64,000 nucleotides of DNA from Ascoidea asiatica JCM 7603. Taxonomy: Eukaryota; Fungi; Ascomycota. A program made the translations under genes and the position numbers. The DNA is taken from contig BCKQ01000021.1 in NCBI GenBank assembly GCA_001600695.1, forward strand, positions 1 through 64,000, read 5' to 3'. How positions within the stretch are numbered: the stretch's first letter is position 1; each line of letters begins with the position of its first letter. Positions 29,126 through 51,061 of the stretch are shown here, one piece after another. The notes beneath the pieces are model-generated. The model made no database searches, had not been told where the DNA came from, and saw nothing but the letters and a program-made list of their open reading frames with translations.

Positions 29126-30134
29126 TTATAAACTCATTAAAATTGATAATATTTTACTTTTATCATATTTAATATATTTACTTGTATGTTTTGTGAAATC
29201 TCCAGAACTATGTTTATCATAAAATCTATTATATAATGGAACAATAAAACTTATTTCATTAATTAAATATTTTTTTAATGAAGGATCAGTAATATTATAA
29301 TTTTTAAAAGTTTTAACTAAATCTTCAAATTCATTATTAAAAGTTTTAAATTTATCTTTTATAATATCTTTATTTTTTGAAGATAAACTACCAGAATTTG
29401 AAGAAGTTGAAGCAGTGATAGTGACATCTAATAAATTTGAAGCTAAATTTTTCCAATTTGTTAAAAATAAATTTAAAAATCTTTTTCTTAGTTTTTCAAA
29501 TCTATCTTTACTTAAAGTGAAATTAATTGAATTTGAATTATTAAAGAATAAAATTGAATTAATTTCAGATCTTTTAATAATTTGTTCAATTAAAGTTAAA
29601 TTTGTAATTAAAAAAAAACCAAGAGTTGAATTTATTAAATTTTTATTTTTTAAAGTTGTTGAATAAATTAATTTTGCTTTAATTTCAAGATTTATCATAA
29701 TTGCATCTATAGAATCAATGAAAAAACAACTTAATAATATTTTATCTTTTGATAAAATTTCATTATCATTATCAATGTCATTAATATTATTATTTGAATT
29801 AATATTTAAATTATCTATAGCTTTTTGATAACTTGAATGATATAAATTGATTGAATTATAAGTTTGTAAGAAAAATGGTTTTTGATTTGAGAACCATGAA
29901 CCAATTGACATATCATTAATAATTTCAAGACATGAATTTTTATAATCAGAAAATTTTCTTAATTTTGACATTAATTCAACAGTAATTTCAGAAACTCCAT
30001 TATCTTTTGGTAAATTTATTAAAGAATTATTTATTTTTAAATCAATATTTTTTAAATAATCTTTAAAAAGATTTTGACTTAAAGATTTTATAATTTGAAA
30101 ATTTTTTGAAATTAAAATTATTGATTCATTATAT

Positions 30135-30174
<40 letters not shown>

Positions 30175-30686
30175 CAGTTATTATATTATAATTATTTAAA
30201 GTTTTAAATAGATTAATTTTACATAAAATTAATTCAAATAATAATAAAGAATGAGTATTGAAATTTGATTTTATAAAATCACTTATATCAATTAAAATAC
30301 TTGAATAATTTGAGAATGGTTTTGTAAAAATATCATTTAAGATTAAATTTATTTGATTATTTGAATTATTTGAATTATTTAAATTTATACTTTGAAATAA
30401 GTTTGAGATTAGTTTATATTCATTATTTAAATGATTAATTAAAATATTTGTATAATTAGTTATACCATTTGAATTTTTTTCATAAAAATTAGTTGTAGTT
30501 GTATTTGTAGTTGAAGTTGTTGAAGAAGATTTTGATAATTTTGTTGAAAGTGATAAAGAATCTAAAGATTTTATAATTAATTGAGATCTATTTAATACAT
30601 ATATGGATATTAATTTATCAAAAGAATTTTTTGAATTTGTATTAAAGAATTGTAAAATTAAATTTAAATTTGTTATAATATTATTA

Positions 30687-30723
<37 letters not shown>

Positions 30724-31213
30724 CCAGATCATTGAGATCATTAAGATCTGTATTTAAATTATCAGTGAAATAAATGATAAGATTATTATTACCATTTGAG
30801 ATTAAATTATTTAAATTATTAACAATTCCAATAAATTGATTTAAATTTGAATTTGAATTAATTTTAAATTTTAAATTTATTGAATTTTTTAAATTTAATA
30901 AATAATTTTTTAAATTATTAATATTATTTAAATTTATTGAATTATCATTAATAATAATTTGATAATTCGAAATTATTTCAGCATAATTATTAATTTTATT
31001 AATTATTAATAAAGAATCATGAACATTTTTTTTATATGAAGTTAAATTATTTGAAGTATTAATTATTGGTTTAATTAAATTTAAAGAATTTAAAGATAAA
31101 TTTGAAATTTTATTTAATGAAGAATTTATTGAATTGATTAGATTATCTGAATTTATAAGATTTTCTTCAAGAACAGTTACATCAGCTTCATCTATATCCA
31201 CCAAAAAAGACAT
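29126..31213 (-). CDS. EXO70: Exocyst subunit Exo70
   Basis: VDIDEADV N-terminus; KDKFKTFNNEFE, PLYNRFYDK, KYIKYD C-terminus. Confidence 0.95.
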
Positions 31214-31589
31214 TCTTTTAATATATTGTAACTAATTTAATTGAATTTGATTGAATTTAATGGATTTTAATAGAATTTAGTCCTTTAAATTGAATTAAAT
31301 TGTATTAAATCCTTTGATTATTTGAATTTTGCCAGTTTTGAGGAGGTTTCGTTTTTATTTGTTTGTTGTCACCAGCGAGAAAAGGAAACCCGGAAAAGTG
31401 GTCTCGGATACAGGTTTGCAGTGTTTTCGCGATTGAAGAAAATGAAAGTGAAATGAAAGAAAGAAATGAATATTTTATTATTTATTGTTTATTTATTGTG
31501 TTGTGCTGATTGTGTTGGATTGTTTGTTGATTAATATATCATTATTGATTGGAATCTAAGAATAGTCTTATAGGTGTTTGTGGTTCAAG

Positions 31590-32228
31590 ATGAGCAAAGT
31601 CAACTCTGTTACTGAAAAGAAAGGTCAGTCTGAAAACCAGTCTCAAAATCAATCGACGACAATAGCTCCAGGTGGAAACACTTCAACATCAACAGAAAAT
31701 AATATCAATGAAGCAGTGATTCCAAGAGATGTTCGATTACTTCAATTAATATTTCATAATCATAAAATCGAATCTTATGAAGATCATGTTCCATTACAAT
31801 TAATGGATTTTGCTTATAGATATACAACAAGTGTTTTAAAAGATGCAGTTTTTTACAATGATCATTCAACTGCAAAACCTTCGAATATTACAACTGCAGG
31901 TAATACAGGTTCAAAACAACCATTAAGCGTAGATGATATAAGATTAGCAATAGCTGCCAGAACCAATTATCAATTTAAACCAGTTCCTCCAAAGGAATTA
32001 CTTTTACAAATTGCAAGTGAAAAAAATTCAAAACCTTTACCTCCTGTTATTCCAAGTTGGGGTTTAAGATTACCTCCTGAGAAATATTGTTTAACAGGTA
32101 AAGATTTAGAATTATCTGAAGAATTACTAAATGATAGTGATATGGAAGACGAGGAAGAAGAAAACAACAAGGACATCAAAGACAACAAAAACATGGAAGA
32201 TGAAGACAACGATGTTGAAATGACCTGA
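31590..32228 (+). CDS. TAF9: TFIID/SAGA subunit Taf9
   Basis: PRDVRLL, VPLQLMDFAYRYT, GLRLPPEKYCLT; first ATG at 31590. Confidence 0.95.
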   Translation: MSKVNSVTEKKGQSENQSQNQSTTIAPGGNTSTSTENNINEAVIPRDVRLLQLIFHNHKIESYEDHVPLQLMDFAYRYTTSVLKDAVFYNDHSTAKPSNITTAGNTGSKQPLSVDDIRLAIAARTNYQFKPVPPKELLLQIASEKNSKPLPPVIPSWGLRLPPEKYCLTGKDLELSEELLNDSDMEDEEEENNKDIKDNKNMEDEDNDVEMT

Positions 32229-32531
32229 TCATTCACTCTTTCCTCTTGCTCTTCCTCTTGCTCTTGCTTTTGTTTCTGTCTTTTTCTATCACGAATCTCT
32301 TTCTTTTCCTTTTCTTATCTATTTCTCTTTTCTTATGTACATTACCTTCTCCTTCTCATTTTCCTTTTTTATAATTTATAGCTGATTTCAATTTCAATCA
32401 AATTTCATTTTTGCTGATAAGTTACACAAACACATTACAAAATTAATCGATTCTGTAATTAAGTTATTAAGTAACGGTAATATCTGCTTTATACATATGT
32501 CAGTAACTTGATTTTTTATTGTTGTATTTTA

Positions 32532-32604
32532 GGTTTGTTGGTCAAGTGGTTACGACGCTTCGTTTACACCGAAGAGATCGCGAGTTCGAACCTCGCACGA
32601 ATCA
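32532..32604 (+). tRNA. tRNA-Val (anticodon TAC)
   Basis: Cloverleaf: acceptor GGTTTGT/ACGAATC, anticodon arm CTTCG-TTTACAC-CGAAG, T arm GCGAG-TTCGAAC-CTCGC; followed by a T-run terminator. Confidence 0.95.
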
Positions 32605-33070
32605 TTTCTTTTTGTTATTTTTTATAAATTGTTATTCAATAATTCTAAATGAAGTGTGTATATGCACCACGATTTCAATTCAGCGTTCTCTAACATAAAA
32701 TAGAATCTACATTACTATTTATTTAAGAAAAAAAAGATATGCCTGATTTATAATTCTATTAAAAAATGACTTATATATATATATATATATATATGAGATT
32801 CTAATAAATTTAAATAAATAAAGCAATAAAATCTAAAATTTGAAAAAGAAGCTTGAGAATATTAGAGAAAAAAAAAAAATAATAACTTGTAATTTGAAAC
32901 TTGTGATTGGTAACTGGTAACTGGTAGCTTGAAAAAATTAAAAAATGTTGAAAATCCTAAATCCTGGAAAACTAAAACCCCCTAAGAAATTAAGAAATAA
33001 ATTAAGAAAGAAGATTAAGAAAGAAAAAAAAAATATAAAAATGAAGTAAATAAAATTGTTCAAAGATAAT

Positions 33071-36000
33071 TTAAAAATTTGGTAATGGCATCCTTGGATC
33101 AATTTTTTCTGAAGATTTTACTTTTTCAATAATTTCATCTTTTGAATTTTCATTAGAATTCGAATTTGAATTTGAGTTAGAATTAGAATTAGAATTAGAA
33201 TTAGAATTAAAATTAGAATTGGAATTGGAACTAGATTTAGTGTTAAAATCTTTACTTCCAGTATTGGTATTATTTATAGATTTAATTTTTGCTTTATTAT
33301 GAACTCCAGTAATTGTTGGACTTTCATTATGAATTACAAATGATGACGTTGATATTAATGAATTACTATCAACATCATTATCTCTACCATTATTGAAACT
33401 TCTTTGTGGTTTATTAAATCCAAATGGATGCCATAATCTATCTCCTGAAACTCCAATTCTATCTGATGATAATCCTGATGATGATCTCATTAAATCTGTT
33501 ATATCAACACTTTCATCATCATTATTCATTAATAAACTTGAACTTCTTTCAAGATTAAGATTATTTATACTAAAATTTAATGAACTATATGATTCACTTC
33601 TTTCTGATAATAATAATGGTGCCATTTCAACACTATTATTATTATGTATTGTTGATGTTGATGACATTGATTCACCTAAAGCTTCATCTTCTGGAAGATC
33701 TAATAATGAACTATCTGCTCTTAATTGTGGTGTTAATAAATCAATATTTTCTGGTGTTGGCGGTATAATAACCGCTGATGGTATAAATTGTTCAGTAACT
33801 GGACTTCTAATATCAAAATTCATTTTTTTTGAGTTATTCTTCCAATTTTTATTACCATTACCATTACCATTATTACTATTACTATTACTATATACATATG
33901 AATTTTCTAATTGTTCATCTAATGAAAATGATCCTAAAATTGAATCAATATCCTTTGGTCTATTAATTTCTATTGAAGGTTTCAGTGATGATCCAATTGA
34001 TGGTCTTCTTCCTTGATTATCTACTGTAAGAAACATTGAAGATCCTGATGATGAATTTTTTCTATTACCTTTATAAAGATCACTATTATTATTATCAAGA
34101 TCAAAACTTAATTTTGAAGAACTTGGAGAAAAACTCATTTTTGCTCTTCTAACTTCTGGTGAAACTGCTCTTGCAATACTTTGAGGTAAATGTGGACTTA
34201 CTCCTCTAAATACAAATCCAGATGCAACATCATCATCTAAATCATCATTAGAAAGACTTGGTTCCATTGGTGGAATTTCTATAGACATGTTAACATTTTT
34301 TTTTGATCTTCCTCTTGTAGTAGTTGGATCATCTCCACGTGTTTTAAGAGTTCTTAATCTTTTCTTAATCCTTTCTTCTTCAAGAACTTCATCATAACTT
34401 GGAGGTAAATTATCTTCCAATTGATTTGTCATTGAAATTGCCATATCAAATGGCGGAGGATTAATTGAAGGTTTAATTAGTGTTCCAGAACGACTTTTAG
34501 TTTGAGCTACAATTGGAGGAATTAATAAATGACTTGTCATAGAAGACAATAATCCACGATTTATATTATTGTTATTATTATTAGATGTGGGAGAAGATAT
34601 ATTATTAAATTCAGATGAAGGCGTTTGTAGTGGTTGAAATTTTTGATTAAATGTCGATGAAGGAATTTGTCTTGGTGAAAGTAAACCAGACATTCTAGGT
34701 GATGATAATGCATTTAATTGAGGTGATAAAGCTTGAAGTCTTGGTGATAATGCTTGAAGTCTTGGTGATAATGCTTGAAGTCTTGGTGATAATGCTCTTA
34801 TAGTTGGTGATAAAGCTTGAAAATTCGGGGAAATTAAACCAGAAGCTCTCAGAGTATTTGGGTCTAAAGTAGATGTTATACTTATTGAAGGTTGTAAAGG
34901 TGGTGAAGAAAGATTATTCTGAGGATTTAAAGGTTGAGCTTGTGGTGAATATAATTCAACATTCATTTTTTGAGGTTTATATAAATTTGATTCAATCATA
35001 TTACTTGTAACCTCAGATCCACCAAATTCTTTATCAAGTTGAGAATAATTATGAGAATGATCTTTATCAACTTCTAAATTAAAATCTTCATCCGTTATTA
35101 AATCATTTTTTGTTTGTAATGAGGAATCTTCTAAAGCATCTTTTATATTTATTGAAGTATTATCTAAAGATTGAGGAACATTGATATTACCATTTACAGA
35201 AGGATCTGTTGGATCTCTTAAAATTTCTGGAGGAAAAATTGGAACATTATTTGGATTTTCAAGCATAGTCATATTACCATATTCATCATAACCCATTAAA
35301 GTTGATGCACCAATTCCATCATAAGCAGGTAATAAAGTATTAGCTTGAGTACATAATGGATGAAGTACATGAATTGGAGAATCAATAGAAATTTCAAAAT
35401 GTTTTCTTGATTTTTTTGGTTTTGATTTCTCTGGTTTGTCATTTGAATTTGTAGTTCCACTTCTATTTCTTGAAGAATTTTGATTTGAATTATTTGAATT
35501 TATTGAAGCACTAGTATTATTACGAGCTCTACCTATTATTGAATTATTTGAGGAACCTCCAGTATGATTTGGATTCAATGTATTTAAGGCGGTTAAAGAA
35601 AGTGAAGAATGACTACCATTATCACCATTTGAATTTAAATTTGAATTATCACTTGAATTTTCATTTGCATTTTCATTTTCAGTTTTTTTTTCTTTTTCTT
35701 TTTCTTTATCTATTTCTTCATTTTTTTTTGAAAGCCTTATACAAATTTTTAACCAATGATGACATTGAATATTAGTATATTCAGTATCTGGATGAAATCT
35801 TCCACCCATTTTTCCAACCATTTCAGGAACAAATAATTGATAGGTAAAATCTTTTGAAGAAATATATTCATCATCTTCATCTTCATCTTTCTTTTTATCT
35901 TTATCTTTATCTTTATTATCATTTTTAGAATTTTTAATACTTGGAATTAAATTTGAAGAATTTGAACCATTTAACAGAAACCCAGGTAAATGATGAGATA

Positions 36001-37960
36001 AAGAAGAATGTCTTCTATGATGAGTATTATTTTGATTATTATGATTATTATTTGTAGAAGTATTTGTAGTTGAAAATAAATTATCAGATTGTAAAGTACT
36101 ATGTTTTTTTAAATGATTAATACTATTATTACTCGTATCAGAATTATTACTTTGAGAAGAAGTTATAACATTATTATCAAAATTTTCATCATGAAATTCT
36201 TTTAATAAATTATTACCAGATTTTGGTTTATGTTCTAATAAAAGATATTTTTTTTGTGGTTCTAATCTATGAACTTTTTTTTTTTTACACCAATATTCTA
36301 AAATTTCAATTAAATAAATTTTAATTTTATAAATTTTTAAAGTTTTTTCAATTGGATTTAATTTTATATTAATTGGTAAAAATGAATTTAAAATTAAAAA
36401 ATTACTTAAAACAGAAATTGAATAATTTAATTTATTATCCCAAGATTTATTAATCATTATTGGTTCAAAATTATCTTCTAGAGATTGAGAAGAATTAGTT
36501 CTAATAAAATTTAATTCTTTTTTTGAATGTAAATTACCTTTAAATTTTGAAAATCTTTCAATATTTACATTTAATGAATAATTTATATAACCAAAAGTTA
36601 CATTAATTGATTCAGGAGTTGATTGAGGTATTGGATGTTCAAAATTATAAATATAATCACCTTGATTAAATATAAAATTTTCAATTTCTTTATTATTGTT
36701 ATTGGTATTATTATTATTATTACTATTATTATTATTATTACTATTATTATCAAATTGTTGATCATTTAAAGATAATGAAGAATTATTTAAATTATTAAAT
36801 CTTGAAGAAATTATTGAAGATATTGAAGAATCTATAGTTGAATTTGTGAAAGATCTATGTTTTGTTGGAGATAAAGTTCTTGATCTTTGATAGTTATTAT
36901 TTATGATACTATTATTATTATTATTATTATTATTATTATCATCATTGAATATTTTAACTTTATTTAATAATTGTGGTTTTAAATTTGTTTTTAAAATTGA
37001 AATTGTTTTTGTTTTTGAAGCTGATCTTGATCTTGATTTTATTGAAGTATTATCTAAAGAAAACATTAAATCATCAATATCATCATTATTATTATTATTA
37101 TTAATACTTGTACTTCTATTTTTAGTTCTTGATATTCTTTGAGTATTATTATTATTATAAATATTAATATGATTTGCACCACCATTTGAATAATTAATTA
37201 AATTTTTATTTGAATAATTAAAAAAAGGCCAAGTATGATTTAAAATTGTTTCATTTTCAAAAAATTCTGATTTTTTTGGAGGTATACCTTCTGGCCAATT
37301 TGTTCTTGCATTACCTTTTAAATTTAATTCAATTTTTTTTAATTTTGTATTATTTTTTAAAATTTTTATTAATAAAATTCCTCTTAATAATAATGGAGGA
37401 CTTTCATTATATAAAGTTGAAATTTGATTTGTATTTATAATTATATTACCACTTATATTTGCACTTGAATTATTATTTGTATCAGCGGTTAAATTTGATT
37501 GATTATTTTGATTATTTTGATTATTTTGAGTAGTTAATTGAATATTACTATTAACTGGAGTTGAAGGTATTCTTCTTCTACTTCTTCTATTAACATTTGA
37601 ATTTGAATTACTTTGAAAATTATTTGAATCACCAATATTATTTTGTAAGAAGAAATTTTCTTCAGTTAAAATTAAATAAACTTTTAAAGATGAAGTTTCA
37701 ATTAATGGTTTTTCAGGTAATTTTGGTAAATAAGTATATTGTTTTATATTATTATTTAAATTATTAATATTTAAATTATTAATATTTAAATTATTATTTA
37801 ATTGAGTTATATTTGATAAATTTATAGTTGAATTTGTTTGATTTGATAAATTTATTGTTGAATTTATTGTTGAATTTAATGAAGATTTATAATCAGGTGG
37901 AGATTGAAATTGATTATTGAATTGATTATTATTAAATTGATGATAATCATTATTCTGTTG

Positions 37961-38002
<42 letters not shown>

Positions 38003-38098
38003 GTTATTGTTATTGTTATTGTTATTTCCTAAAGAAAAAGAAAAAGTTGAAGTTAGATCAGATAATAAATCTGAAGGATTCAAAGGATTATTTACCAT
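33071..38098 (-). CDS. ALY2: Alpha-arrestin Rsp5 adaptor, Aly1/Aly2 (Art6/Art3) family
   Basis: ARTNWPEGIPPKK, HWLKICIRL, HFEISIDSPI, PY motifs (PPDY, LPAY, PPSY); first ATG at 38098. It lies near EXO70, as ALY2 does in S. cerevisiae. Confidence 0.85.
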
Positions 38099-38504
38099 TG
38101 TAAGTATTTTATTATTAATAAATTTCGAACACAATCATTCTATGAATAATATAAATAAATGAATGATAATCTAAAAGAAATAAGAAATAATTTATAAGAA
38201 ATAATAAACCTTTGTGATGAAGACTGATAGATCCAAACAAATGATTGATATATTTCAAACAAGGACTGTATTAAATATTAAATATTTATTATTTATTATT
38301 TATTATTTATTATTTATTCATTATCTATTATCAATTATCTAGTATCTATTATTTATTATCATTTATTTATCATTTGGTACTTATTGAGTAGAGAACGAGT
38401 GGAATAAATGGCAAAGGTTCCCCTGTTTATTGATTGATTATCGAGAGCGAAGCAGTACTGGAGTAGCAGTGCTTAGTTAACAGTCAGTTACCGGAGAGTC
38501 TAGC

Positions 38505-38580
38505 TGCTGGGAGTGCTGGGAGTGCTGAGAGTTAAGCACTGAGAGTTAAGCACTGAGTGTTAAGCGCTGGGAGTACTGGC
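38505..38580. repeat. GC-rich compound minisatellite (GCTGGGAGT and CTGAGAGTTAAGCA units)
   Basis: Read directly in the ALY2/ALD divergent promoter. Confidence 0.7.
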
Positions 38581-39312
38581 CGCTTGTAACGGTATGAGAA
38601 ACAGTTCCGGTGAAAGAAAGAGACACCGCGCCACGGAGACTGCTGGTTCCACAGGCGGATACAGCACACCCAGCACTTCCACGGCACAAGCAATACTAGC
38701 CACTTGTTTTGATTACATAACAGCATGTGATACATCCGATATATTTCTCTTTTATGCTTTTTCTCCTTTTTCTAGCCAAACAATCTCGATAATCAATTTC
38801 GATAATCTCAGATCAATACAATTGCACTATCAAGAAATTATCCCATCTTCCAAAAACGGGGGCCCACTATATACTGCCAAAAATGCGTGGTCCGGGACCA
38901 TAGTAATAAGCTAAATCATATGACATATAAAGGTAGTCCCGTTTTTAAGGGTTTAAAAGTGTTTAAAAAAATTATTTGGATTAATTTGAGGTTTTTGTTC
39001 CTGTTTTAGAAACAACGTTTACTATGTAAAAAAGAAGATTTTGAGGTGGTATTTAGCGTTTCTGGCAGTATATAGCGGTTCACCAAAAACGGAAGTAAAC
39101 GCTTTCTCTGTAAACTTATTCATCTTCAATAGAGTAACTGAAATAAATATTAATAATCACTTATATTCAGTAATTTTACTCAATGACTTCCCTAAATTGA
39201 CGTTTTAGTTAATTTTATTCAAATATAATTGAAAATTATACTCAAATTATGAAATTATATATATATTAATCAATATGTAACTTTTGTTAATTATTAATTC
39301 CATTCTATAATA

Positions 39313-40841
39313 AATTCACAATAGTTAATAATCAAAATGGTCGAATTACCTGAATATTATGAAGTTGAATTACCTAATGGTTTAAAATATAAACAACCAA
39401 CTGGTTTATACATAAATAATAAATTCATACCCTCAATTGATAAAGAAATTATTCAGCCAATTAATCCATCAGATGGTAAACCATTATCAAAAGTATATTG
39501 CGCCAAATCAAATGATGTTGATTATGCCGTCGATATTGCCCTTGATGCATTTAAAAAAGTTTGGAAAAAAACTCCAGGTACAGAAAGAGGTAAAATTTTA
39601 TTCAAATTATCTGAATTATGTGAAGAAAATTTTGATTTATTAGCTTCAATTGAATCTCAAACTTCTGGTAAACCATTTGAACAAAATTCAAAAGGTGATA
39701 TTTCTGAAGTTATTAATGTATTTAAATATTATGCAGGTTGGGCAGATAAAATTCATGGTAAGACAATTCCAATTGATGATAATAAATTTGCATATACTGT
39801 TCATGAACCATATGGAGTTTGTGGACAAATTATACCATGGAATTATCCATTAGCAATGATGGCATGGAAACTAGCTCCTGCTTTAGCTGCTGGAAATACT
39901 GTAGTTTTAAAAACTGCTGAACAAACTCCATTATCTGCTTTATTTTTTTGTACCTTAATTGAAAAAGCTGGATTTCCTCCTGGAGTTTTGAATATAATTT
40001 CAGGATATGGTAAAGATGCTGGTAATGCATTAGCTTCTCATTTGAAAGTTTCAAAGATTGCATTTACTGGTTCAACTAATGTTGGAAAATTAATTCAACA
40101 AGCAGCTTCTAATAATTTAAAAGCTGTAACTTTAGAAACTGGTGGTAAGTCTCCATTAATTATATTTGAAGATGCAGATTTAGAAAAAGCTATAAAATGG
40201 GCTGCTTTTGGAATATTTTTTAATTCTGGTCAAATTTGTACATCAAATTCAAGAATTTTAATTCATAAAAATGTTTATGATAAATTTTTGAAATTATTAA
40301 GCGATTATATAAATAAAGAATATAAACAGGGTAAGCCATTTGATTCTGATGATATTATGGTCGGTCCTCAAGTTTCCAAATCACAACAAAATAGAATCTT
40401 AGATTATATTGAAATTGGTAAGAAGGAAGGTGCAAAAATATACACTGGAGGTTTTAAAATTACAAATGATGAAAATCTAAAAGATGGTTTTTTCATTAAA
40501 CCAACTATTTTCTATGATGTTAAATCAGATATGAGAATATTTCAAGAAGAAATATTTGGACCAGTAGTTGTTTGCTCAACATTTGATACTGATGAAGAAG
40601 CAATAGAATTAGCTAATTGTACCGAATATGGATTAGGTGCAGCATTATTCACCAAAGATATAACCAGAGCCCATAGAGTCTCTAGAGAATTAGAAGCAGG
40701 AATGGTTTGGATTAATTCAAGTAATGATAGTGACTTCAGAGTACCTTTTGGTGGGGTTAAAAGTAGTGGAATTGGTAGAGAATTAGGAGAATATGGTTTA
40801 ACTAATTATACTCAAGCAAAAGCTTATCATGTCAACTTAGG
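39313..40841 (+). repeat. Left arm of 1529-bp inverted repeat
   Basis: Reverse complement of 46469-47997. Shadow ORFs are identical and spot checks found no mismatch. Confidence 0.95.
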
Positions 40842-40854
40842 TTGGAATCTATAA
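39337..40854 (+). CDS. ALD2: Cytosolic aldehyde dehydrogenase, Ald2/Ald3 type (copy 1)
   Basis: PWNYPLAM, FTGST, TLETGGKSP, NSGQICTSNSR, EEIFGP, WINSSND; no presequence. Confidence 0.9.
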   Translation: MVELPEYYEVELPNGLKYKQPTGLYINNKFIPSIDKEIIQPINPSDGKPLSKVYCAKSNDVDYAVDIALDAFKKVWKKTPGTERGKILFKLSELCEENFDLLASIESQTSGKPFEQNSKGDISEVINVFKYYAGWADKIHGKTIPIDDNKFAYTVHEPYGVCGQIIPWNYPLAMMAWKLAPALAAGNTVVLKTAEQTPLSALFFCTLIEKAGFPPGVLNIISGYGKDAGNALASHLKVSKIAFTGSTNVGKLIQQAASNNLKAVTLETGGKSPLIIFEDADLEKAIKWAAFGIFFNSGQICTSNSRILIHKNVYDKFLKLLSDYINKEYKQGKPFDSDDIMVGPQVSKSQQNRILDYIEIGKKEGAKIYTGGFKITNDENLKDGFFIKPTIFYDVKSDMRIFQEEIFGPVVVCSTFDTDEEAIELANCTEYGLGAALFTKDITRAHRVSRELEAGMVWINSSNDSDFRVPFGGVKSSGIGRELGEYGLTNYTQAKAYHVNLGWNL

Positions 40855-41427
40855 TTATAACTAATCATATCAAATATCAAATAGTAGATAAATTATAAAA
40901 ATATAATAAAATAATTAAATTTTTTGATAGAACTTCTCTTTGTAAATTAAATTATCAAGAAAAATAAACTGTCGCCAGAATTGGGGTTCTTGTGTTGTAG
41001 TTTGCTTGTTTTCGCTTTCTGGAACAAAGCATAAAAAAAACAAGGCCAAAATAAAGCAGAGATTGAAAGTGAATAAAGAAAATAAAGAATAAAGAAGAAC
41101 TCGAAAAGAAAAGACTAAAGAAAACACGAAGAGTATTAAAACAAAGAAGATAAATGATTGATTTTTACTAGAACTTGATTCAATTAGCTTGGAAGAGCAA
41201 ACAAGTCATTTTGAAATTAAGATATCAATAGAAAGTTATCCACTTTGTAAAATTAAAATCTATAATTAAAGAAGATATAAAATAACAGTTACTCCTTGAT
41301 GAATTAAAAGATTATCTCTTTAACATAAAATTAACTTAAAATTAACTTAAAATTCAAGATTAAAAAAATAACTTAACTACTAAAGTTCTAGATAAATAAT
41401 AATAAACAAAATATATTTCAAATAAAC

Positions 41428-42129
41428 ATGGGAAAAGCTTTAATTATAATTGACGTTCAAGAGGATTTCTTACCTCCAAATGGTTCATTAGCTGTCAAAG
41501 ATGGAAGAAAAATAATTCCAACAATAAATAAATTGATTAATAATAAGGAATATAGTTGGGATTTGATTGTTGCAACAAAAGATTGGCATCCAAAAGATCA
41601 TTGCTCTTTTGCTTCAAATAATGGAGTTAAACCATATGAAACTATTGAATTTCATAAACCAAAAACTAATGAAAATGATAAAAATTATATTGAAGAAATT
41701 AAAAAACAAATTGTTTGGCCAGATCATTGTATTCAAAATGAATTTGGTTCTGAGTTTGGTATTGAGTTTAAAAAAGAATTTGAAAAGTTAATTAATTCAA
41801 ATTCAGATATTAATAAAGTTAAAATTGTTAAAAAAGGCTATCTTAAAGATAGAGAATATTATTCATGTTTTAAAGATGTTTGGGGTTTACATCATACTGA
41901 ATTAACAGATTTACTAAAAATTGACAAAATTGATGAAGTTTATTTTGTTGGTATTGCTTATGATTTTTGTGTTTTATATTCTGCAATTGATTGTTCAAAA
42001 TTAAATTTTATTAAAAATACTTATGTTTTAAGAGATGTTTGTAAAAGTGTTTATCCTGATAAGATAAATGAAACTGATTCAATTTATAATAAAAATAATG
42101 TAAAAATTATTTCTTTTGCAGTTCATTGA
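41428..42129 (+). CDS. PNC1: Nicotinamidase
   Basis: IIDVQEDFLPP, DWHP, WPDHC, KGYLKDREYYS, GIAYDFCV. Confidence 0.95.
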   Translation: MGKALIIIDVQEDFLPPNGSLAVKDGRKIIPTINKLINNKEYSWDLIVATKDWHPKDHCSFASNNGVKPYETIEFHKPKTNENDKNYIEEIKKQIVWPDHCIQNEFGSEFGIEFKKEFEKLINSNSDINKVKIVKKGYLKDREYYSCFKDVWGLHHTELTDLLKIDKIDEVYFVGIAYDFCVLYSAIDCSKLNFIKNTYVLRDVCKSVYPDKINETDSIYNKNNVKIISFAVH

Positions 42130-42334
42130 ATGTTTAAACCCTGAAAGTCATCTTTTGTTTTTTTTTGTTTTTCTTCTTTGAATAATATATTCTGTCTCTT
42201 TTTTAAGGTAAAAAATAAATCTACTTTTTTTTTATTTTATAAATAATCAACAATATTTATAACTGTCTCGTTTATATGTATGCAAAATATGTTTTTGTCA
42301 TTATCATCCTTTTAGAAAATATATTATATACAGT

Positions 42335-43740
42335 TTAACCACATGCAACTTCTTTATCTATTGAATTTTCATTTATTTGAAATTCCTTAATTAACTCATC
42401 ATATAAAGCTATATCTTCTAATTTAACATCATTTAAAAATTCAAAAATTTGTCCTCTTGAATAATAATTAGCTTTAGAATTACTATAATGCCAATTTTGT
42501 TCATTTATTTCATTATTACTACTAGTAATAGTATTAGTAGTAGTTGCATTGATATTGTCATCAAAATTGATTAAATTTTTAATTGTATTTAAATTAATTA
42601 AAACAAACTTTATTCCACTATCTGGACATTCAAAATTTATATTTAATAAAATTTTTTCCATTATACCTCTTAAACCTCTTGCACCAGTACCTTGTTTAAT
42701 TGCAATTTTTGTAATTAATTCCAAAGATGGTTTTGTAAAAGATAATTTAACATTAAATTGTTTAAAAATATATTCATATTGTTTAATTAAACAATTTTTT
42801 GGTTCAATTAAAATTCTCAATAACTCAGATTCTTTTAAAGATTTTAAACTTGTAATTATTGGAACTCTACCAATTAATTCTGGAATCATACCATACGAAG
42901 TTAAATCCTGTGGTGTAACTAATTCTAAAGTTGAAACAACTTTACCATTACTTAATTTGATTTCTTCAATTTTATTGATTTTATTTGCAGTTTCTAAATT
43001 TTCATTTATAATTTCCGATTCAATTTTATTTTTGTCATTATTATCATTATTTTTCTTTAAATTATTTTCATTATTATCATTGATTAAAAGATCAGCTTCA
43101 AATCCAATTGAAGATCTTGATAATCTATTACTTATATATTTATCTAAACCAGTGAAAGCACCCATTAATATAAATAAAATATTACTTGTATCAATCATAA
43201 AAGTTTCAGATTTCTTTTGAGAAGCTAAAGGATTATTGCCAATAAAATTCAGTTTTTCTTTTTTATTTAAAGGTCTTTTAACATTAATTGTGATTGTAGT
43301 ACCTTCAATTAATTTTAATAAAGCTTGTTGAACACCTTCACCACTTACATCTTTTGTACCAGTTAAAATACTTGGTTTTGCTAATTTATCAATTTCATCT
43401 AAGACTATAATACCTTTTTGACAATTGAGTAAATTATAATTTGAATCAATTAATAGTCTTTCTATACATAATTCAACATCTTCACCAATATAACCAGCTT
43501 GAGTTAATTGAGTACAATCAGTTATTGAAAATGGTACATTTAAAATTTTTGATAAAGTTTTTGCTAATAAAGTTTTTCCAGTACCTGTTGGACCTAAAAT
43601 TAAAATATTTGATTTATCAATTTCTGGTATAAGATTCTCATCAATTTCTTTTGATAATTGATCAAATTCCTTGAAACTTGTTCTTAAATTATCATCATTA
43701 TCCTCATTATTTAGATGTTGATTTTGATCATCATTTTCAC

Positions 43741-43795
<55 letters not shown>

Positions 43796-44638
43796 GATTT
43801 TGTTATCATTTTGGTTTAAATTTAATCTTAGTCTTGTATAATGATTATAAACAGCTACAGACATTACCTTTTTAGCAAAATCTTGACCAATAATGAATTT
43901 ATCTAAATAATTTTTTAATTCTCTTGGATTTGGAGTTTTTTTCTGCTTAATAATTGTATTTAAAATGTTATCGTCCTTTTTATCTGTTTTAAGATTATTA
44001 TTATTTGATGTGATTGTAGAATCATGGTTAATATTCAATTCATCTTTAATATGCTTTTTATTTATTGATTGATTAAAATTAGAGTTTTGATTATGATTTT
44101 GGGAATGATTGTGATTAGAATACTTACTATTGTTATTATTGTTATTACCATTGAGATTATAAAACTTTTTATTCTCTCTTATTGGTTTTGGAGTAAATTT
44201 ATTTGAATCAAATTTACTATCATCACTGTTATTATTATTATGAGTGTTATTATTATTACCTACAAATTCAATAAAACCATTTTTGGCGCTAAAAGTGTTT
44301 TCTATATCATTATCATCTATGTCAATATTTGATTCATTATTTGAATTTAAATCTTTATCTAATTGCTTATTAGTATTGAAAATTTTATCTTCTTCATTAT
44401 CAATATCATTTTTATCATTAGGATTCTTATTATTAATATCATTATCTTTATTATTAAATAAATTATCATTATCATTATCACTACTTGTAGAATATGAATT
44501 GACAAAAGTCAAATGTTTTGAAGTATTCCAATGATTCAAATGATAAAATGTATTTAAAGTTTTTAATCTATTGAAATTGCTTGATTTGATTCTATAAGTT
44601 GTTGAATATATTAAGCATTTTGATTTAAAGGATATCAT
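42335..44638 (-). CDS. MCX1: Mitochondrial ClpX AAA+ unfoldase
   Basis: GPTGTGKT, LTQAGYIGEDVE, LDEIDK, DVSGEGVQQALLK, GARGLR; first ATG at 44638. Confidence 0.95.
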
Positions 44639-45127
44639 TTGAGATACGAGATGATTCAAGGATAGAGAAAAGATAAGAAATGGGAACTATGAATTATTTA
44701 TTTGCTTTAGTTAATGGGATAAGAAAAAATGATTTGGATATTAATCAAAGATATATTATTGATTGATTAGATATGATTATCTGATTATTTACATATTGAT
44801 TATATATTATTTATACTATCTACTACAACTATCAATTATATCTATTATTTACTGGTTCTTTCTCAGATGCTTTGATTCGATGCAAAATCCTCGGAAAAGT
44901 GGTGGTGCACAGGCAGATAACACTAACAGCCACTGCGACTAGCCCTCTCCGCTATTTGCCTGTGTTTTTTGTCTGTTTCTTTTGACTGGCCTTTATTATA
45001 ATGGTGATTGAAGAGAAATTTGAAAGTATTTGAAAGTATTTAGAAGAGTATTTGAAAGAGTGTTTGAACAAGTATTTGATGAAGAATTATGAGTATATTT
45101 CACTAAACAGGGAATATATTTGCATTG

Positions 45128-46099
45128 TTACTGGAGAAATTCTTTAATCATCTCATAACTTAAGAAACTAACTGCCATTGAAGGAATAACTTTTAATAAA
45201 TTCGCACTTAATCCATTATAATATCCAGTGAATCCTTCATTTTTACCAATTGAAATTAAAGCTTGTAAGATTGATTTATATTCATATCCACCACTTTGAT
45301 ATCTTCTTCTTAAAATATCAAAAGGATAAATTAAACTTTGAGAAATACCACCAGATATAGCACCATTAATTAATTTGAATCCTGAATTTGAAATATCAAA
45401 ATTTCTTTTTTTTTCTTCTTCTTTTAATCCTTCATAAATTGTAAAATTTAATCCAACATATGGTGCAACTCCAATTGTTGTTGGAATCACTCCTTTATAT
45501 AATGCTAAAATTCCACCTTCTTTTTTAATAATATCTCTAAAAATTTTAAAAAATCCATCTGGTTTATTATCTTTTATTATGATGTTTTCAATGTTATTAT
45601 TATTATTATTAAGATATTTCTTAGATATATTTTGTTTATAATTTAATCTTTCTGCAGTTTGTATAGATAATCTAGTTCTAATTAAATCTAAAGGATATGT
45701 TGCATAAACACTACACGCACCAGCTAAGGATCCTGCAATTAATCTATCTCTATTATTACTACTTTTACTATTTTTAATATTATCTTGATCAAATAAATGA
45801 TAATAAACAGAAAATTGAACAGCTTGATATGGAAAAATTCTAATACAATTTAATAAATTACCTCTAAATAATCCGATAATACCTTCTTCTTTATAAATAT
45901 TAAAAATTGTATTGAAAATTCCTTTATATTTTTGTTTTGAATTTATATCCTGAATTTGAAAAATTATTTTAACTCTTTCAAATGGTGAAACAACAGTTCT
46001 AGAAATTGAACCTGCCAAACCACCTGCTAAAAATGATGAAATAAAATCATGTCTTAGCAATTCTCTTATTTCCTTTATACCATTTACTATTTCTGTCAT
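45128..46099 (-). CDS. Mitochondrial carrier, YPR011C (Mrx21)/SLC25A42-like
   Basis: Three PxD/ExxK/R motifs (SPFERVK, YPLDLIRTR, YPFDILRRR) and LFRGNLLNCIRIFPY; first ATG at 46099. Confidence 0.9.
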   Translation of the reverse strand: MTEIVNGIKEIRELLRHDFISSFLAGGLAGSISRTVVSPFERVKIIFQIQDINSKQKYKGIFNTIFNIYKEEGIIGLFRGNLLNCIRIFPYQAVQFSVYYHLFDQDNIKNSKSSNNRDRLIAGSLAGACSVYATYPLDLIRTRLSIQTAERLNYKQNISKKYLNNNNNNIENIIIKDNKPDGFFKIFRDIIKKEGGILALYKGVIPTTIGVAPYVGLNFTIYEGLKEEEKKRNFDISNSGFKLINGAISGGISQSLIYPFDILRRRYQSGGYEYKSILQALISIGKNEGFTGYYNGLSANLLKVIPSMAVSFLSYEMIKEFLQ

Positions 46100-46455
46100 A
46101 TTCAATACTATATCATTTAAATCTATAATAACTAATTTTATATTGTTATATTATAATCATAATCATAATACCAAAAAAATATATTATCGTAGAGTAAAAA
46201 ATCTCATTTTGAGCATGAAAATTTCCTGTTTTTCAATATATTTCTTAAAAAATATCCGTTAAACTTAAAACCAGTAAACAGTTTTACAAACGCTTATCAA
46301 AAATAAACTTCATTCTTTTACGAACTCAATCATTTACTCAGATTCACTTTTTCATTGATTCGATAAACATTCATTAAATTATTAATATTATATATATAAA
46401 AAGACTATAATTTAGAATATAGTTAATAAGAAATAAAATATATTTAGTATATTTA

Positions 46456-47973
46456 TTATAAATCCCAGCCTAAGTTGACATGATAAGCTTTTGCTTGAGT
46501 ATAATTAGTTAAACCATATTCTCCTAATTCTCTACCAATTCCACTACTTTTAACCCCACCAAAAGGTACTCTGAAGTCACTATCATTACTTGAATTAATC
46601 CAAACCATTCCTGCTTCTAATTCTCTAGAGACTCTATGGGCTCTGGTTATATCTTTGGTGAATAATGCTGCACCTAATCCATATTCGGTACAATTAGCTA
46701 ATTCTATTGCTTCTTCATCAGTATCAAATGTTGAGCAAACAACTACTGGTCCAAATATTTCTTCTTGAAATATTCTCATATCTGATTTAACATCATAGAA
46801 AATAGTTGGTTTAATGAAAAAACCATCTTTTAGATTTTCATCATTTGTAATTTTAAAACCTCCAGTGTATATTTTTGCACCTTCCTTCTTACCAATTTCA
46901 ATATAATCTAAGATTCTATTTTGTTGTGATTTGGAAACTTGAGGACCGACCATAATATCATCAGAATCAAATGGCTTACCCTGTTTATATTCTTTATTTA
47001 TATAATCGCTTAATAATTTCAAAAATTTATCATAAACATTTTTATGAATTAAAATTCTTGAATTTGATGTACAAATTTGACCAGAATTAAAAAATATTCC
47101 AAAAGCAGCCCATTTTATAGCTTTTTCTAAATCTGCATCTTCAAATATAATTAATGGAGACTTACCACCAGTTTCTAAAGTTACAGCTTTTAAATTATTA
47201 GAAGCTGCTTGTTGAATTAATTTTCCAACATTAGTTGAACCAGTAAATGCAATCTTTGAAACTTTCAAATGAGAAGCTAATGCATTACCAGCATCTTTAC
47301 CATATCCTGAAATTATATTCAAAACTCCAGGAGGAAATCCAGCTTTTTCAATTAAGGTACAAAAAAATAAAGCAGATAATGGAGTTTGTTCAGCAGTTTT
47401 TAAAACTACAGTATTTCCAGCAGCTAAAGCAGGAGCTAGTTTCCATGCCATCATTGCTAATGGATAATTCCATGGTATAATTTGTCCACAAACTCCATAT
47501 GGTTCATGAACAGTATATGCAAATTTATTATCATCAATTGGAATTGTCTTACCATGAATTTTATCTGCCCAACCTGCATAATATTTAAATACATTAATAA
47601 CTTCAGAAATATCACCTTTTGAATTTTGTTCAAATGGTTTACCAGAAGTTTGAGATTCAATTGAAGCTAATAAATCAAAATTTTCTTCACATAATTCAGA
47701 TAATTTGAATAAAATTTTACCTCTTTCTGTACCTGGAGTTTTTTTCCAAACTTTTTTAAATGCATCAAGGGCAATATCGACGGCATAATCAACATCATTT
47801 GATTTGGCGCAATATACTTTTGATAATGGTTTACCATCTGATGGATTAATTGGCTGAATAATTTCTTTATCAATTGAGGGTATGAATTTATTATTTATGT
47901 ATAAACCAGTTGGTTGTTTATATTTTAAACCATTAGGTAATTCAACTTCATAATATTCAGGTAATTCGACCAT
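46456..47973 (-). CDS. ALD2: Cytosolic aldehyde dehydrogenase, Ald2/Ald3 type (copy 2)
   Basis: Protein identical to copy 1 except the penultimate residue (GWDL vs GWNL). Confidence 0.9.
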   Translation of the reverse strand: MVELPEYYEVELPNGLKYKQPTGLYINNKFIPSIDKEIIQPINPSDGKPLSKVYCAKSNDVDYAVDIALDAFKKVWKKTPGTERGKILFKLSELCEENFDLLASIESQTSGKPFEQNSKGDISEVINVFKYYAGWADKIHGKTIPIDDNKFAYTVHEPYGVCGQIIPWNYPLAMMAWKLAPALAAGNTVVLKTAEQTPLSALFFCTLIEKAGFPPGVLNIISGYGKDAGNALASHLKVSKIAFTGSTNVGKLIQQAASNNLKAVTLETGGKSPLIIFEDADLEKAIKWAAFGIFFNSGQICTSNSRILIHKNVYDKFLKLLSDYINKEYKQGKPFDSDDIMVGPQVSKSQQNRILDYIEIGKKEGAKIYTGGFKITNDENLKDGFFIKPTIFYDVKSDMRIFQEEIFGPVVVCSTFDTDEEAIELANCTEYGLGAALFTKDITRAHRVSRELEAGMVWINSSNDSDFRVPFGGVKSSGIGRELGEYGLTNYTQAKAYHVNLGWDL

Positions 47974-47997
47974 TTTGATTATTAACTATTGTGAATT
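46469..47997 (-). repeat. Right arm of 1529-bp inverted repeat
   Basis: Reverse complement of 39313-40841. Confidence 0.95.
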
Positions 47998-48652
47998 AAT
48001 TTTAAAATTTATTTATATATACCTGTTTTACTTCTTCTTCTTCTTCTTATTCTTCACTTTTGTTTTTTTCTTCTTTTGAAATAAGGGGGTTGTCCCTGAA
48101 TTTATATCATTATTGAAATAGTGAAGTCCCTGTTTACCTGTCTTCCTGTATATTTGACATTTTTGATTACGAATCCAATCCAATCCAATTCACTCCACTC
48201 AATCTCTTAACCTAATTATCATTGCTAACCTTTTTTTAAGCGCCTTTTTGATCTGATAAGAAAACGAGAACAGTGAAAGTCTTCACCTAAAAAAGTCAGT
48301 GCTGCTGCTCGGCAACCCCAGCTAATCACTGCCCGCGCGGCTAATGCCAAAGTAAATCTAAGCTCAAAGACAAAAAAAAGTGCTGGAGCTCAGTGGCAAT
48401 TGATCGATCTATTTGAGTAAAAAAAGAATTTGAATTTGATATATTTAAAGTGTTTAAACTATGGAATAAAATCTATCTAAAAGGTAAAATATAGTCTAGT
48501 TGAGTGAATCACTCTGGAAATTAGTATTATATAGCATTGGATTTGAACTCATCACAGTCAAAAGAATGGGGGACTTGAAGTGTGAAGAAAGAATCAAAGA
48601 GTGAAAGAAAATGAAATAGGAATAGTAGAAGTAGGTAACATCAATTGATAAA

Positions 48653-50584
48653 TTATTTTTCATTAGATAATGAAGAATTCGATTCTAAATTAGTTTCTTC
48701 GCCTAATTCTTCATCATGTTGTTTTTGAATCATTGCTGCAAATCCAAATCTTGATTTTTTTCTTAACATTGGACCCCATTTTTCAAAAACCCATGGAACT
48801 GGAAGCATAGCAAATGCAATAAATCCAAAAACTGATGATGCCCATCCAGTACCTAATTTATGATACATTTGTACTGTAAATAATGGAAAAATTGATGCAA
48901 TTATATATCTTAAAAGGTTATTTGCTGCTAATGCTGATGCAACTGAAATTGCAGGATATGATAATGTAAAATAAATCATACAACTAAAAAAAATTAAAAT
49001 TAATGAAAATCCAAATGGTATACCTGCTAATGTTGGTACAATCCAATGAACATTTTCTCTTGCAGACCAACCTAACCAAAATAAACTTGGTGGTAAACAA
49101 ACTGCTCCAACTTTACAAATACCTAATCTTGATTCAGGTTCTGGAAATTTTAAATTTCCATTTTCATCTAAATCACCTCTTTTACCATTTGGATTAATTT
49201 TCCAATATTTTAATCTATCAATTAAAATATAATAAATTGTACCTAATAATAATCCAAGTCCAATACCTAAAAATGGTAATCCACCAATTCCTGTACTCAT
49301 ACCATATGTACCAATAAAAATTATTGGATATGCTTCAAAAAATCCAAATAAAACTGCAAATACAAATGCAATATAAATTGAAAAAACCATAACAATTGGT
49401 TCAACAAATAACATTTCAATTGGTTTAATTAAAGTAATTGTAAAAATAATTTTTAAAAAATTTAAATCAATTTTTGGTAAATCTAATTTTATACCTCTTT
49501 TTATTGCACGTTTTCTTAAAATTACAGGTTTATAAGTTTCTGGTAATAATAATACAGGTAATAAAATTGCACCTGCTGCCATTAAATTTACCCACATTGT
49601 CCATTTCCAACCTTTATTTTCTGCAACAAATCCTCCAATAATTGGTCCTAAAATTGGTCCTAAAAATGGTGAAAGACAAAATGATGCCATTGCAATACCT
49701 TGCATTTCAGGTTCCCAAATATCAGAAATTGTACCACCTGCAACTGCCATTGCTGGTGATGCAAAAAATCCACTAAAAAATCTTAAAATTAAAACTGAAT
49801 AAATTTTATTTGATAAACCAACACCCATTGTAAATAACATTGAAGTTGGTAATGAAATTATATAAACAATTCTTCTACCAAATAATTCTGAAATTGGTGC
49901 TGCAAATGCTGGTCCAAATGCTAAACCAATTAAATAAAATGTTAAACCAGATAAACCTAAAGTTTGTGAGATATTAAATTGAATTTCTAAATATGCTAAA
50001 CCTGAAACAAATAATGATGAACCAAATGTTACAACTAAACAAATAAATGCAACAGTCATTGTTGATCTCCATCTTTTCCTTAATGACCAATTTTTTGGAT
50101 TATCAGGATCAGTATCATTATCCCAATCTAAATCACTTAAAGAAACTAAATTATCTTCATCATTTTCATCTTCTTTATTATTATTATTATTATTATTAAT
50201 AGATTTACTATTTTTATGAGAAACTATTGATTTTAATTCATTTTGAAAATTTTCTGCAGGAGTTATTGTTAAACTTCTTGTTTTAATTAATTTAATTTCA
50301 TTATCAATTTCTTCATTTGTTAATTTTCTTGATAATGTTTTTTTTAAAATTAAATTATTATTATTATTATTGTTATTACTTGAATCAGTTGTTTTATAAG
50401 TATCTAAAAATTTTTCATTTCTAACTGAATCATCATCATCATCATTATTATCACTATTATTACTACTGATATTATTATCTATATTATTAATTTGATTTTT
50501 CAGAACAGTTAAATTTGAAGTTTTATTTGAAATAGTTGAAGTGAATACTTCATCTTTTTTAGAAGATTCATTATTATCCACCAT
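48653..50584 (-). CDS. TPO4: MFS DHA1 polyamine/drug antiporter, Tpo4-like (paralog A)
   Basis: DLDWD..DPDNPKNWS, GLTFYL, APISELFGRR, PETYKPVILRKRA, EPIV, LFGFFEAY. Confidence 0.88.
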   Translation of the reverse strand: MVDNNESSKKDEVFTSTISNKTSNLTVLKNQINNIDNNISSNNSDNNDDDDDSVRNEKFLDTYKTTDSSNNNNNNNNLILKKTLSRKLTNEEIDNEIKLIKTRSLTITPAENFQNELKSIVSHKNSKSINNNNNNNKEDENDEDNLVSLSDLDWDNDTDPDNPKNWSLRKRWRSTMTVAFICLVVTFGSSLFVSGLAYLEIQFNISQTLGLSGLTFYLIGLAFGPAFAAPISELFGRRIVYIISLPTSMLFTMGVGLSNKIYSVLILRFFSGFFASPAMAVAGGTISDIWEPEMQGIAMASFCLSPFLGPILGPIIGGFVAENKGWKWTMWVNLMAAGAILLPVLLLPETYKPVILRKRAIKRGIKLDLPKIDLNFLKIIFTITLIKPIEMLFVEPIVMVFSIYIAFVFAVLFGFFEAYPIIFIGTYGMSTGIGGLPFLGIGLGLLLGTIYYILIDRLKYWKINPNGKRGDLDENGNLKFPEPESRLGICKVGAVCLPPSLFWLGWSARENVHWIVPTLAGIPFGFSLILIFFSCMIYFTLSYPAISVASALAANNLLRYIIASIFPLFTVQMYHKLGTGWASSVFGFIAFAMLPVPWVFEKWGPMLRKKSRFGFAAMIQKQHDEELGEETNLESNSSLSNEK

Positions 50585-51061
50585 TTTAGAGATTTAAATT
50601 AGAATTAATAATTAAATTTGGTTTTAAATTTGGTAATTTAATTGAATATACCAAGAATGAAATATAAGAGAATAGATAACGATAATTAAGAAACAAGAAA
50701 ACGAAAAAAAAAATAAAATTAAAATAAGAAGAAAAGTAAAATAAAATAAGAAGAAGTTAAAGTTGATTTGATTTGATTTAACTTAGTTCGATTACGTATA
50801 TATTATTGAAGTTATTAAAGAGAATTTTGAATCTTTTATATTATATTATTTTAATTTATTTCAATTGCTCTTGAGGTATTTCTTAAAAATTATTTAAAGA
50901 ATATGAAAGAACCGAAAAAAAAAAAGAGAAAGAATAAAAGAATGAAATAAAGAAAAAAAGAAATTAGGATGGAAAGAAAATAAGTTTTAAGTATCGTGCA
51001 AGATAGGAATCACAGGCTTTGTTATTGAAAAATATGTATACCAATTTCCATAGATCTTATA

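What the first reader, a model, noticed from the sequence alone, without database searches (positions are those of the whole stretch)
39313..47997. Candidate invertible cassette: two ALDH genes form a 1529-bp inverted repeat around PNC1-MCX1-carrier
Seen: 39313-40841 and 46469-47997 are reverse complements, with no mismatch in the stretches compared. Identity starts 24 bp upstream of the ATG and stops 4 codons before the stop (GGT TGG AAT CTA vs GGC TGG GAT TTA). Flanks beyond are unrelated. Three substitutions in the last 4 codons next to about 1.5 kb of identity point to an old duplication still being homogenised, not a fresh copy. Established: kb-scale inverted repeats support flip/flop inversion, as at mating-type loci of methylotrophic yeasts. 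Inference: a crossover would flip the 5.6-kb interior. That would swap the ALDH C-termini and 3'UTRs between the two promoters, and change whether PNC1 or the carrier lies downstream of each ALDH transcript.
Basis: partly seen in the sequence, partly recalled or inferred. Interest (0 to 1): 0.85.

Follow-up and report, generated by a model that had tools for sequence, protein, structure and literature searches.

The report
Twin yeast genes kept identical, inverted
Two copies of an ordinary aldehyde dehydrogenase gene face each other in a yeast genome and are kept letter-for-letter identical by recombination, as in a species that split off about 100 million years ago; the DNA between them may occasionally flip as a by-product, but nothing shows a regulated switch.

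Summary
The 1529-bp inverted repeat is real: 0 mismatches, and three runs give one 1529-nt contig at exactly these limits at about twice the flanking depth. The genome is almost certainly Ascoidea asiatica; the arms are two ALD2/3-type genes. A. rubescens also has an inverted ALD2 pair beside TAF9-arrestin-EXO70. Its copies are 100% identical from the ATG to the last codons but only 70% identical to these. This is concerted evolution by gene conversion. The enclosed block is not conserved: the A. rubescens pair is divergent and encloses SOM1-FMO, and its PNC1 lies about 550 kb away. No MAT gene, silencing region or tyrosine recombinase was found, and near-identical inverted pairs recur in this genome (two others verified; the scan noted about eight more elsewhere). 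A flip here would change one residue (N504D) and swap 3'UTRs. Closest known case: the Saccharomyces chromosome XIV FF region, which inverts passively. Inversion itself could not be tested. One lead: A. rubescens keeps two tails (ancestral-type LKL, derived WDL) on one shared enzyme core.

The parts
39313..40841 (+). Left arm of the perfect inverted repeat (24 nt of 5' leader plus ALD codons 1-501 and part of 502)
39337..40854 (+). ALD-A, ALD2/3-type aldehyde dehydrogenase, 505 aa, tail GWNL; catalytic motifs ETGG (267) and GQICT (298) intact
41428..42129 (+). PNC1 nicotinamidase (interior; the A. rubescens orthologue lies about 550 kb from its ALD pair)
42335..44638 (-). MCX1/ClpX-like AAA+ ATPase (interior); the name MCX1 rests on Pfam domains and sequence reading, not on a homologue search
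45128..46099 (-). MRX21/YPR011C mitochondrial carrier (interior); lies 3' of the WDL-tailed ALD copy in both Ascoidea species
46456..47973 (-). ALD-B, 505 aa, tail GWDL; its last 12 nt are identical to those of A. rubescens copy P0121
46469..47997 (-). Right arm of the perfect inverted repeat
38135..39312 (.). ALD-A upstream region, shared divergently with the arrestin gene and unrelated to the ALD-B upstream region; holds a 227-bp MITE-like repeat at 38858-39084
47998..48652 (.). ALD-B upstream region (between ALD-B and the TPO-type MFS gene)
29126..38134 (.). EXO70-TAF9-arrestin block, which also adjoins the ALD pair in A. rubescens (synteny anchor)

Best explanation
This is a pair of ALD2/3-type aldehyde dehydrogenase paralogues in inverted orientation, kept identical by recurrent non-allelic gene conversion (concerted evolution). 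Conversion covers the region of continuous homology, from 24 nt upstream of the ATG to codon 502, and fades at the edges, so each copy keeps its own promoter, last codons and 3'UTR. Shown: the copies are identical within each of two species and saturated between them, and the locus is syntenic. Inferred: (i) the two-copy state predates the A. asiatica/A. rubescens split (about 100 Myr); (ii) inverted orientation lets identical copies persist, because a crossover only inverts the interior, whereas between direct repeats it would delete it; (iii) rare, unregulated crossovers probably invert the 5.6-kb interior, giving at most a near-neutral orientation polymorphism, as at the Saccharomyces FF region; (iv) the likely selective point is one enzyme under two promoters (dose or regulation), not the flip.
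For: The arms differ at 0/1529 sites. The A. rubescens copies are identical over 1505 bp, while interspecies identity is 70%, with 58% of fourfold-degenerate sites different. The tree groups copies by species, 100/100 and 100/99. Both pairs adjoin TAF9-arrestin-EXO70, and MRX21 lies 3' of the WDL copy in both species. Trp at the third-last position occurs in 0 of 110 outgroup proteins, against x[KRH]L tails in 79 of 110. The last 12 nt of ALD-B and of the A. rubescens WDL copy are identical, while the other A. rubescens copy keeps LKL; so both tail types probably coexisted in the ancestor. Read depth is about 2x with a single contig. On the same contig the assembler kept SNPs between the 99.2%-identical arms of another inverted repeat and marked unresolved sites with paired Ns; the ALD arms have neither. 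Salzberg et al. (PMC9731477) describe the same mechanism and saw no flip in about 53,800 mitoses and 950 meioses.
Against: Only two species are available. Polarity and interior differ between them, so continuity of one pair is inferred from tails and neighbours; loss of one copy and re-duplication in the A. asiatica line is not excluded. No inversion was observed directly. Logan contigs can drop bubbles, and run X3 may be the same strain, so a few hidden SNPs between the arms are not excluded.
Confidence: 0.75

Rival explanations
1. Independent inverted duplications of ALD2 in each lineage (for example at inversion breakpoints), each later homogenised; the similarity between species is convergence at one locus.
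For: Polarity (convergent against divergent) and interior genes differ between the species. This genome holds other young inverted duplications of housekeeping genes: an SYF2+TFA2-like pair at 99.2% and a DFM1 pair at 97%. Outgroups have a single ALD2 within the 10 kb examined on each side.
Against: A. rubescens carries both an outgroup-type tail (LKL) and the derived WDL tail that it shares, nucleotide for nucleotide, with ALD-B. Getting this from one WDL gene would need 8 of 12 nt to change back to a consensus-like tail of the same length. A fresh duplication would not leave a 12/15-identical in-frame tail just beyond the identical stretch.
Confidence: 0.15
2. A regulated flip/flop switch, like FF1 mating-type switching, that toggles which promoter drives which ALD tail and 3'UTR and which interior gene receives read-through transcription.
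For: The geometry allows it. A. rubescens switches mating type by FF1 inversion (PMC6692504). In both species the identity stops just before the tail, and in A. rubescens the tails differ strongly (LKL against WDL).
Against: MATalpha1 lies on another contig. The contig is gene-dense, with no ORF-free stretch over 2.5 kb within about 30 kb of either arm, and no telomere was seen at its ends. No PF00589 tyrosine recombinase was found in the genome. The interior is not conserved, and its genes move together with their promoters. A flip here changes only N504D and the 3'UTRs. Similar inverted pairs recur in the genome.
Confidence: 0.05
3. Assembly artefact: the copies differ, or there is only one copy, and the assembler duplicated or homogenised them.
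For: No long reads were found. Paired Ns in another inverted repeat on this contig show that the assembler cannot always phase arms. A. asiatica is described as diploid.
Against: Depth on the arm is about 2x in three runs and contig ends fall exactly at the arm limits. The arms hold no N, and SNPs are kept in other 97-99% pairs. A separate assembly of another species shows the same pattern. A few hidden SNPs would not change the conclusion of concerted evolution.
Confidence: 0.05

Closest known systems
Saccharomyces chromosome XIV FF (flip/flop) region with 4.2-kb inverted repeats YNL018C/YNL034W and YNL019C/YNL033W (Salzberg et al. 2022, PMC9731477)
   Same: Gene-containing inverted repeats homogenised within species and diverged between species, around unrelated housekeeping genes, with no MAT genes; inversion there is a by-product of gene conversion.
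   Different: There the boundaries, polarity and interior are conserved across the genus, promoters lie inside the repeat, and both orientations are documented. Here the repeat is nearly coding sequence only, so promoters and tails differ; interior and polarity differ between species; orientation polymorphism is untested.
FF1 mating-type flip/flop (Ogataea polymorpha, Pachysolen tannophilus, Ascoidea rubescens; Krassowski et al. 2019, PMC6692504)
   Same: One kb-scale inverted repeat enclosing a few genes.
   Different: No MAT genes, no neighbouring centromere or telomere silencing region seen, and no evidence of induced inversion.
Homogenised duplicate metabolic or highly expressed genes in yeasts (histone and ribosomal protein genes, cited in PMC9731477; S. 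cerevisiae ALD2/ALD3, from my own knowledge)
   Same: Paralogues more alike within than between species; the same ALD2/3 subfamily is duplicated in S. cerevisiae.
   Different: From memory, S. cerevisiae ALD2/ALD3 are adjacent, tandem and about 90% identical; these copies are inverted, 4-5.6 kb apart and 100% identical.

Membership tests
Homogenised-IR passive inversion region (Saccharomyces FF type) | Near-identical gene-containing inverted repeat of kb scale | tested here: met
   1529 bp, 0 mismatches; about 2x depth
Homogenised-IR passive inversion region (Saccharomyces FF type) | Copies cluster by species (concerted evolution) | tested here: met
Homogenised-IR passive inversion region (Saccharomyces FF type) | Both orientations found among strains | not testable with these tools
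   Only assembled short contigs were available, and they break at the arm; no long reads
Homogenised-IR passive inversion region (Saccharomyces FF type) | Same interior and boundaries across related species | tested here: not met
   A. rubescens: arm limits similar (ATG to codon 502), but divergent polarity, SOM1+FMO inside, PNC1 about 550 kb away. It works like FF but is not the same conserved block.
FF1 mating-type flip/flop | MATa and MATalpha genes inside the invertible region | tested here: not met
   The interior is PNC1, MCX1, MRX21; MATalpha1 is on contig C50
FF1 mating-type flip/flop | One arm next to a centromere or telomere repression site | tested here: inconclusive
   Contig C21 (190.6 kb) is gene-dense around both arms and no telomere repeat was seen at its ends; centromeres of this species could not be located
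FF1 mating-type flip/flop | Inducible, regulated inversion | not testable with these tools
   Needs PCR or long reads across growth conditions
Site-specific recombinase invertible element (Flp/FRT, bacterial invertons) | Short recombination sites and a dedicated recombinase | tested here: not met
   The arms are whole coding sequences; no PF00589 hit in the genome (other recombinase families not searched)
ALD2/ALD3-type aldehyde dehydrogenase | ALDH domain with catalytic Glu/Cys, grouping with yeast ALD2 and apart from the other ALDH paralogues | tested here: met
   PF00171; motifs; best hits include proteins named ALD2; the tree separates it from three other ALDH paralogues of the genome; outgroup homologues sit beside HLJ1-like or MLH1 genes, which from memory neighbour S. 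cerevisiae ALD2/3

The most novel reading that the evidence does not exclude
For about 100 Myr Ascoidea has kept one ALDH core with two promoters and two C-terminal tails (in A. rubescens a PTS1-like LKL and a non-targeting WDL). Inversion through the identical cores re-pairs promoter with tail at a meaningful, possibly condition-dependent rate: a non-MAT flip/flop switch of enzyme localisation or regulation.
Probability: 0.06. Interest if true: 0.8.

Novelty: new member of a known kind. Interest (0 to 1): 0.4.

Why it matters
It is a clean, previously unreported example (none found in the papers searched) of long-lived concerted evolution of an inverted gene pair in budding yeasts. Its likely age, about 100 Myr, exceeds the 17 Myr documented for the Saccharomyces FF region, and it survived a change of polarity and of the enclosed genes. 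Because the homogenised gene is an enzyme of known type with distinct promoters and tails, it offers a tractable test of the question Salzberg et al. left open: why such repeats stay homogeneous. It also suggests caution with this genome's many 'non-MAT flip/flop' candidates, since near-identical inverted pairs recur here.

Tried and rejected
The first sequencing-run run was one base over the limit and was resent shorter. Exact look-up of window proteins found nothing. A metagenome scan found no Ascoidea relatives (best 63%). Outgroup gene order could not polarise the ancestral arrangement; W. ciferrii, Babjeviella, Pachysolen, P0045 and S. crataegensis all have other neighbours. The idea of an ancestral tandem pair turned into inverted pairs by two separate inversions fits the geometry but is untested. 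The search for AAR2 in the own genome hit only low-complexity sequence. Joints are low-complexity noise or an effect of the stretch's end; none shows inversion, and contigs cannot. Only one arm (6000 letters) could be laid. The two long TIR-bounded stretches on C1 and C12 hold no transposase-length ORF (longest 231 aa). Literature searches found no report of this locus and no evidence that yeast Ald2 tails act as PTS1, so the targeting idea rests on my own knowledge of the PTS1 consensus. A polyamine/aldehyde gene cluster was not supported for PNC1, which is unlinked in A. rubescens; the TPO genes were not located there.
Full report
Observation. The two stretches 39313-40841 and 46469-47997 are exact reverse complements over 1529 nt. 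Each carries a 505-aa aldehyde dehydrogenase ORF (39337-40854 +, 46456-47973 -). Identity begins 24 nt before the ATG and ends inside codon 502. The last four codons and stop differ at 3 of 15 nt, giving tails GWNL and GWDL. Flanks on both sides align no better than shuffled sequence. No third copy exists. The 5627-bp interior holds PNC1, an MCX1/ClpX-like ATPase and the MRX21 carrier.

Is it an artefact? Three public runs, held as Logan contigs, each give one contig of exactly 1529 nt on the arm, with no other letters and about twice the depth of the flanking contigs (87/45, 76/35, 101/52). Such contigs can drop bubbles, two of the runs may be the assembly's source and the third may be the same strain, so this is not fully independent. 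An internal control helps. A second inverted repeat on the same contig (124213-126225 against 169610-171629, 99.2%) keeps its SNPs in the assembly and shows paired Ns where the arms could not be phased. The ALD arms show neither. Two real, essentially identical copies are the best reading.

Organism and gene. The genome has 20.3 Mb in 71 contigs and the window is 23% G+C. The best homologues of ALD, PNC1 and the carrier all come from Ascoidea rubescens, and the A. asiatica NRRL Y-17576 assembly has 71 records (PMC6041473). It is almost certainly A. asiatica. That paper implies about 100 Myr since the split from A. rubescens. The gene is ALD2/3-type: hits are named ALD2, the tree separates it from three other ALDH paralogues of the genome, and the catalytic Glu and Cys motifs are intact.

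The decisive comparison. A. rubescens also has two ALD2 genes in inverted orientation, 4.0 kb apart. They are 100% identical over 1505 bp, from the ATG to codon 502, and differ only in the last codons (GLKL against GWDL). Between species the genes are 70% identical in DNA and 72% in protein, with 58% of fourfold-degenerate sites changed. The tree groups the copies by species with full support. This is the signature of concerted evolution, seen in two separate assemblies, with almost the same tract limits.

One old pair or two duplications? Both pairs adjoin TAF9, the arrestin gene and EXO70, and in both species MRX21 lies 3' of the WDL-tailed copy (adjacent here, 7.7 kb away in A. rubescens). 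Among 110 outgroup homologues none has Trp at the third-last position and 79 end in x[KRH]L. The last 12 nt of ALD-B and of the A. rubescens WDL copy are identical, although the gene bodies are saturated. A. rubescens thus holds both an ancestral-type tail and the derived Ascoidea tail, which is most simply explained by a duplication before the split. In the A. asiatica line the ancestral tail was either overwritten by conversion or lost with later re-duplication. This step is inference from two species.

The cassette is not conserved. The A. rubescens pair is divergent rather than convergent and encloses SOM1 and an FMO gene. Their best matches in this genome lie on contigs C2 and C3. A. rubescens PNC1 lies about 550 kb from its ALD pair. 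What persists is the pair of inverted ALD genes, not the block between them.

No sign of a programmed switch. MATalpha1 maps to another contig. The contig is gene-dense around both arms and no telomere was seen at its ends; centromeres could not be located. No PF00589 tyrosine recombinase was found. The interior genes would invert together with their own promoters (573 and 356 bp of intergenic DNA lie inside). A flip would change one residue (N504D), swap the 3'UTRs between the two promoters and change which gene follows each ALD. Near-identical inverted pairs recur in this genome: I verified a 2.0-kb pair on the same contig (SYF2- and TFA2-like genes, named from sequence reading) and a 1.7-kb DFM1 pair at 97% on C20. 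Unchecked scan notes list about eight more.

Mechanism. Most likely, double-strand-break repair between the two nearby copies converts one to the other across the region of continuous homology and fades at the ends, leaving separate promoters and tails. Inverted orientation makes this safe, because a crossover inverts the interior instead of deleting it (inference from established recombination geometry). Salzberg et al. (PMC9731477) describe this for the Saccharomyces chromosome XIV FF region. They cite about 4% of conversions resolving as crossovers, find both orientations in nature, and saw no flip in about 53,800 mitoses and 950 meioses. By analogy I put occasional passive inversion here at more likely than not over evolutionary time, and a regulated switch at about 5%. 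Inversion could not be tested: no long reads were found, and contigs break at the arm.

What is worth following. In A. rubescens the conversion tract stops just before a tail (LKL) that resembles the weak PTS1-like endings of most outgroup ALD2 proteins, while the other copy ends in WDL. Selection to keep a peroxisomal and a cytosolic form of one enzyme could explain the boundary. That rests on my own knowledge of PTS1; I found no paper testing it, and both tails in this window lack the basic residue, so it would not apply to this species.

Verdict. Real feature; a new member of a known kind (homogenised gene-containing inverted repeat, FF-like), notable for its probable age and for surviving rearrangement, but without evidence of a functional invertible cassette. 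Interest 0.4.

Noticed in passing
window 38858-39084: A 227-bp MITE-like element 253 bp upstream of the ALD-A ATG, with inverted ends (core CTATATACTGCCA). At least 7 other near-full copies at 90-98%, and 19 core matches in the genome. Three copies examined are flanked by a CC-N6-GG-like direct repeat (6- or 10-bp target duplication). No autonomous partner found.
   Followed up: partly
window 48653-55478: A second, older inverted (divergent) pair of TPO-type MFS transporters around HNT3, 78% identical, with identical runs of 40-42 nt and one 94% block that may be old conversion tracts.
   Followed up: partly
G000:C21 124213-126225 and 169610-171629 (L129, L133-L134): A 2.0-kb inverted repeat, 99.2% identical, duplicating SYF2- and TFA2-like genes around 43 kb; paired Ns in both arms.
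   Followed up: partly
G000:C20 168240-180551 (L137, L138): An inverted DFM1/DER1-family pair, 97% identical over 1.7 kb, about 12 kb apart; confirms scan note s1-614608.
   Followed up: partly
G000:C1, C3, C7, C19: Seven AA9 (PF03443) lytic polysaccharide monooxygenase-like genes, including a divergent pair on C19 and a tandem pair on C1; from my own knowledge unusual for a budding yeast.
   Followed up: no
L012 4482-11518 (A. rubescens KV454476.1): The A. rubescens inverted ALD2 pair, 1505 bp identical, tails LKL and WDL, enclosing SOM1 and FMO; a better place than this window to test tail-dependent localisation.
   Followed up: yes
G000:C21 134725-140895 and 144223-150631: Two direct-repeat pairs (743 bp at 94%, 491 bp at 96%); the first brackets N-rich ORF fragments that look like a degraded LTR retrotransposon. 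Observed only.
   Followed up: no
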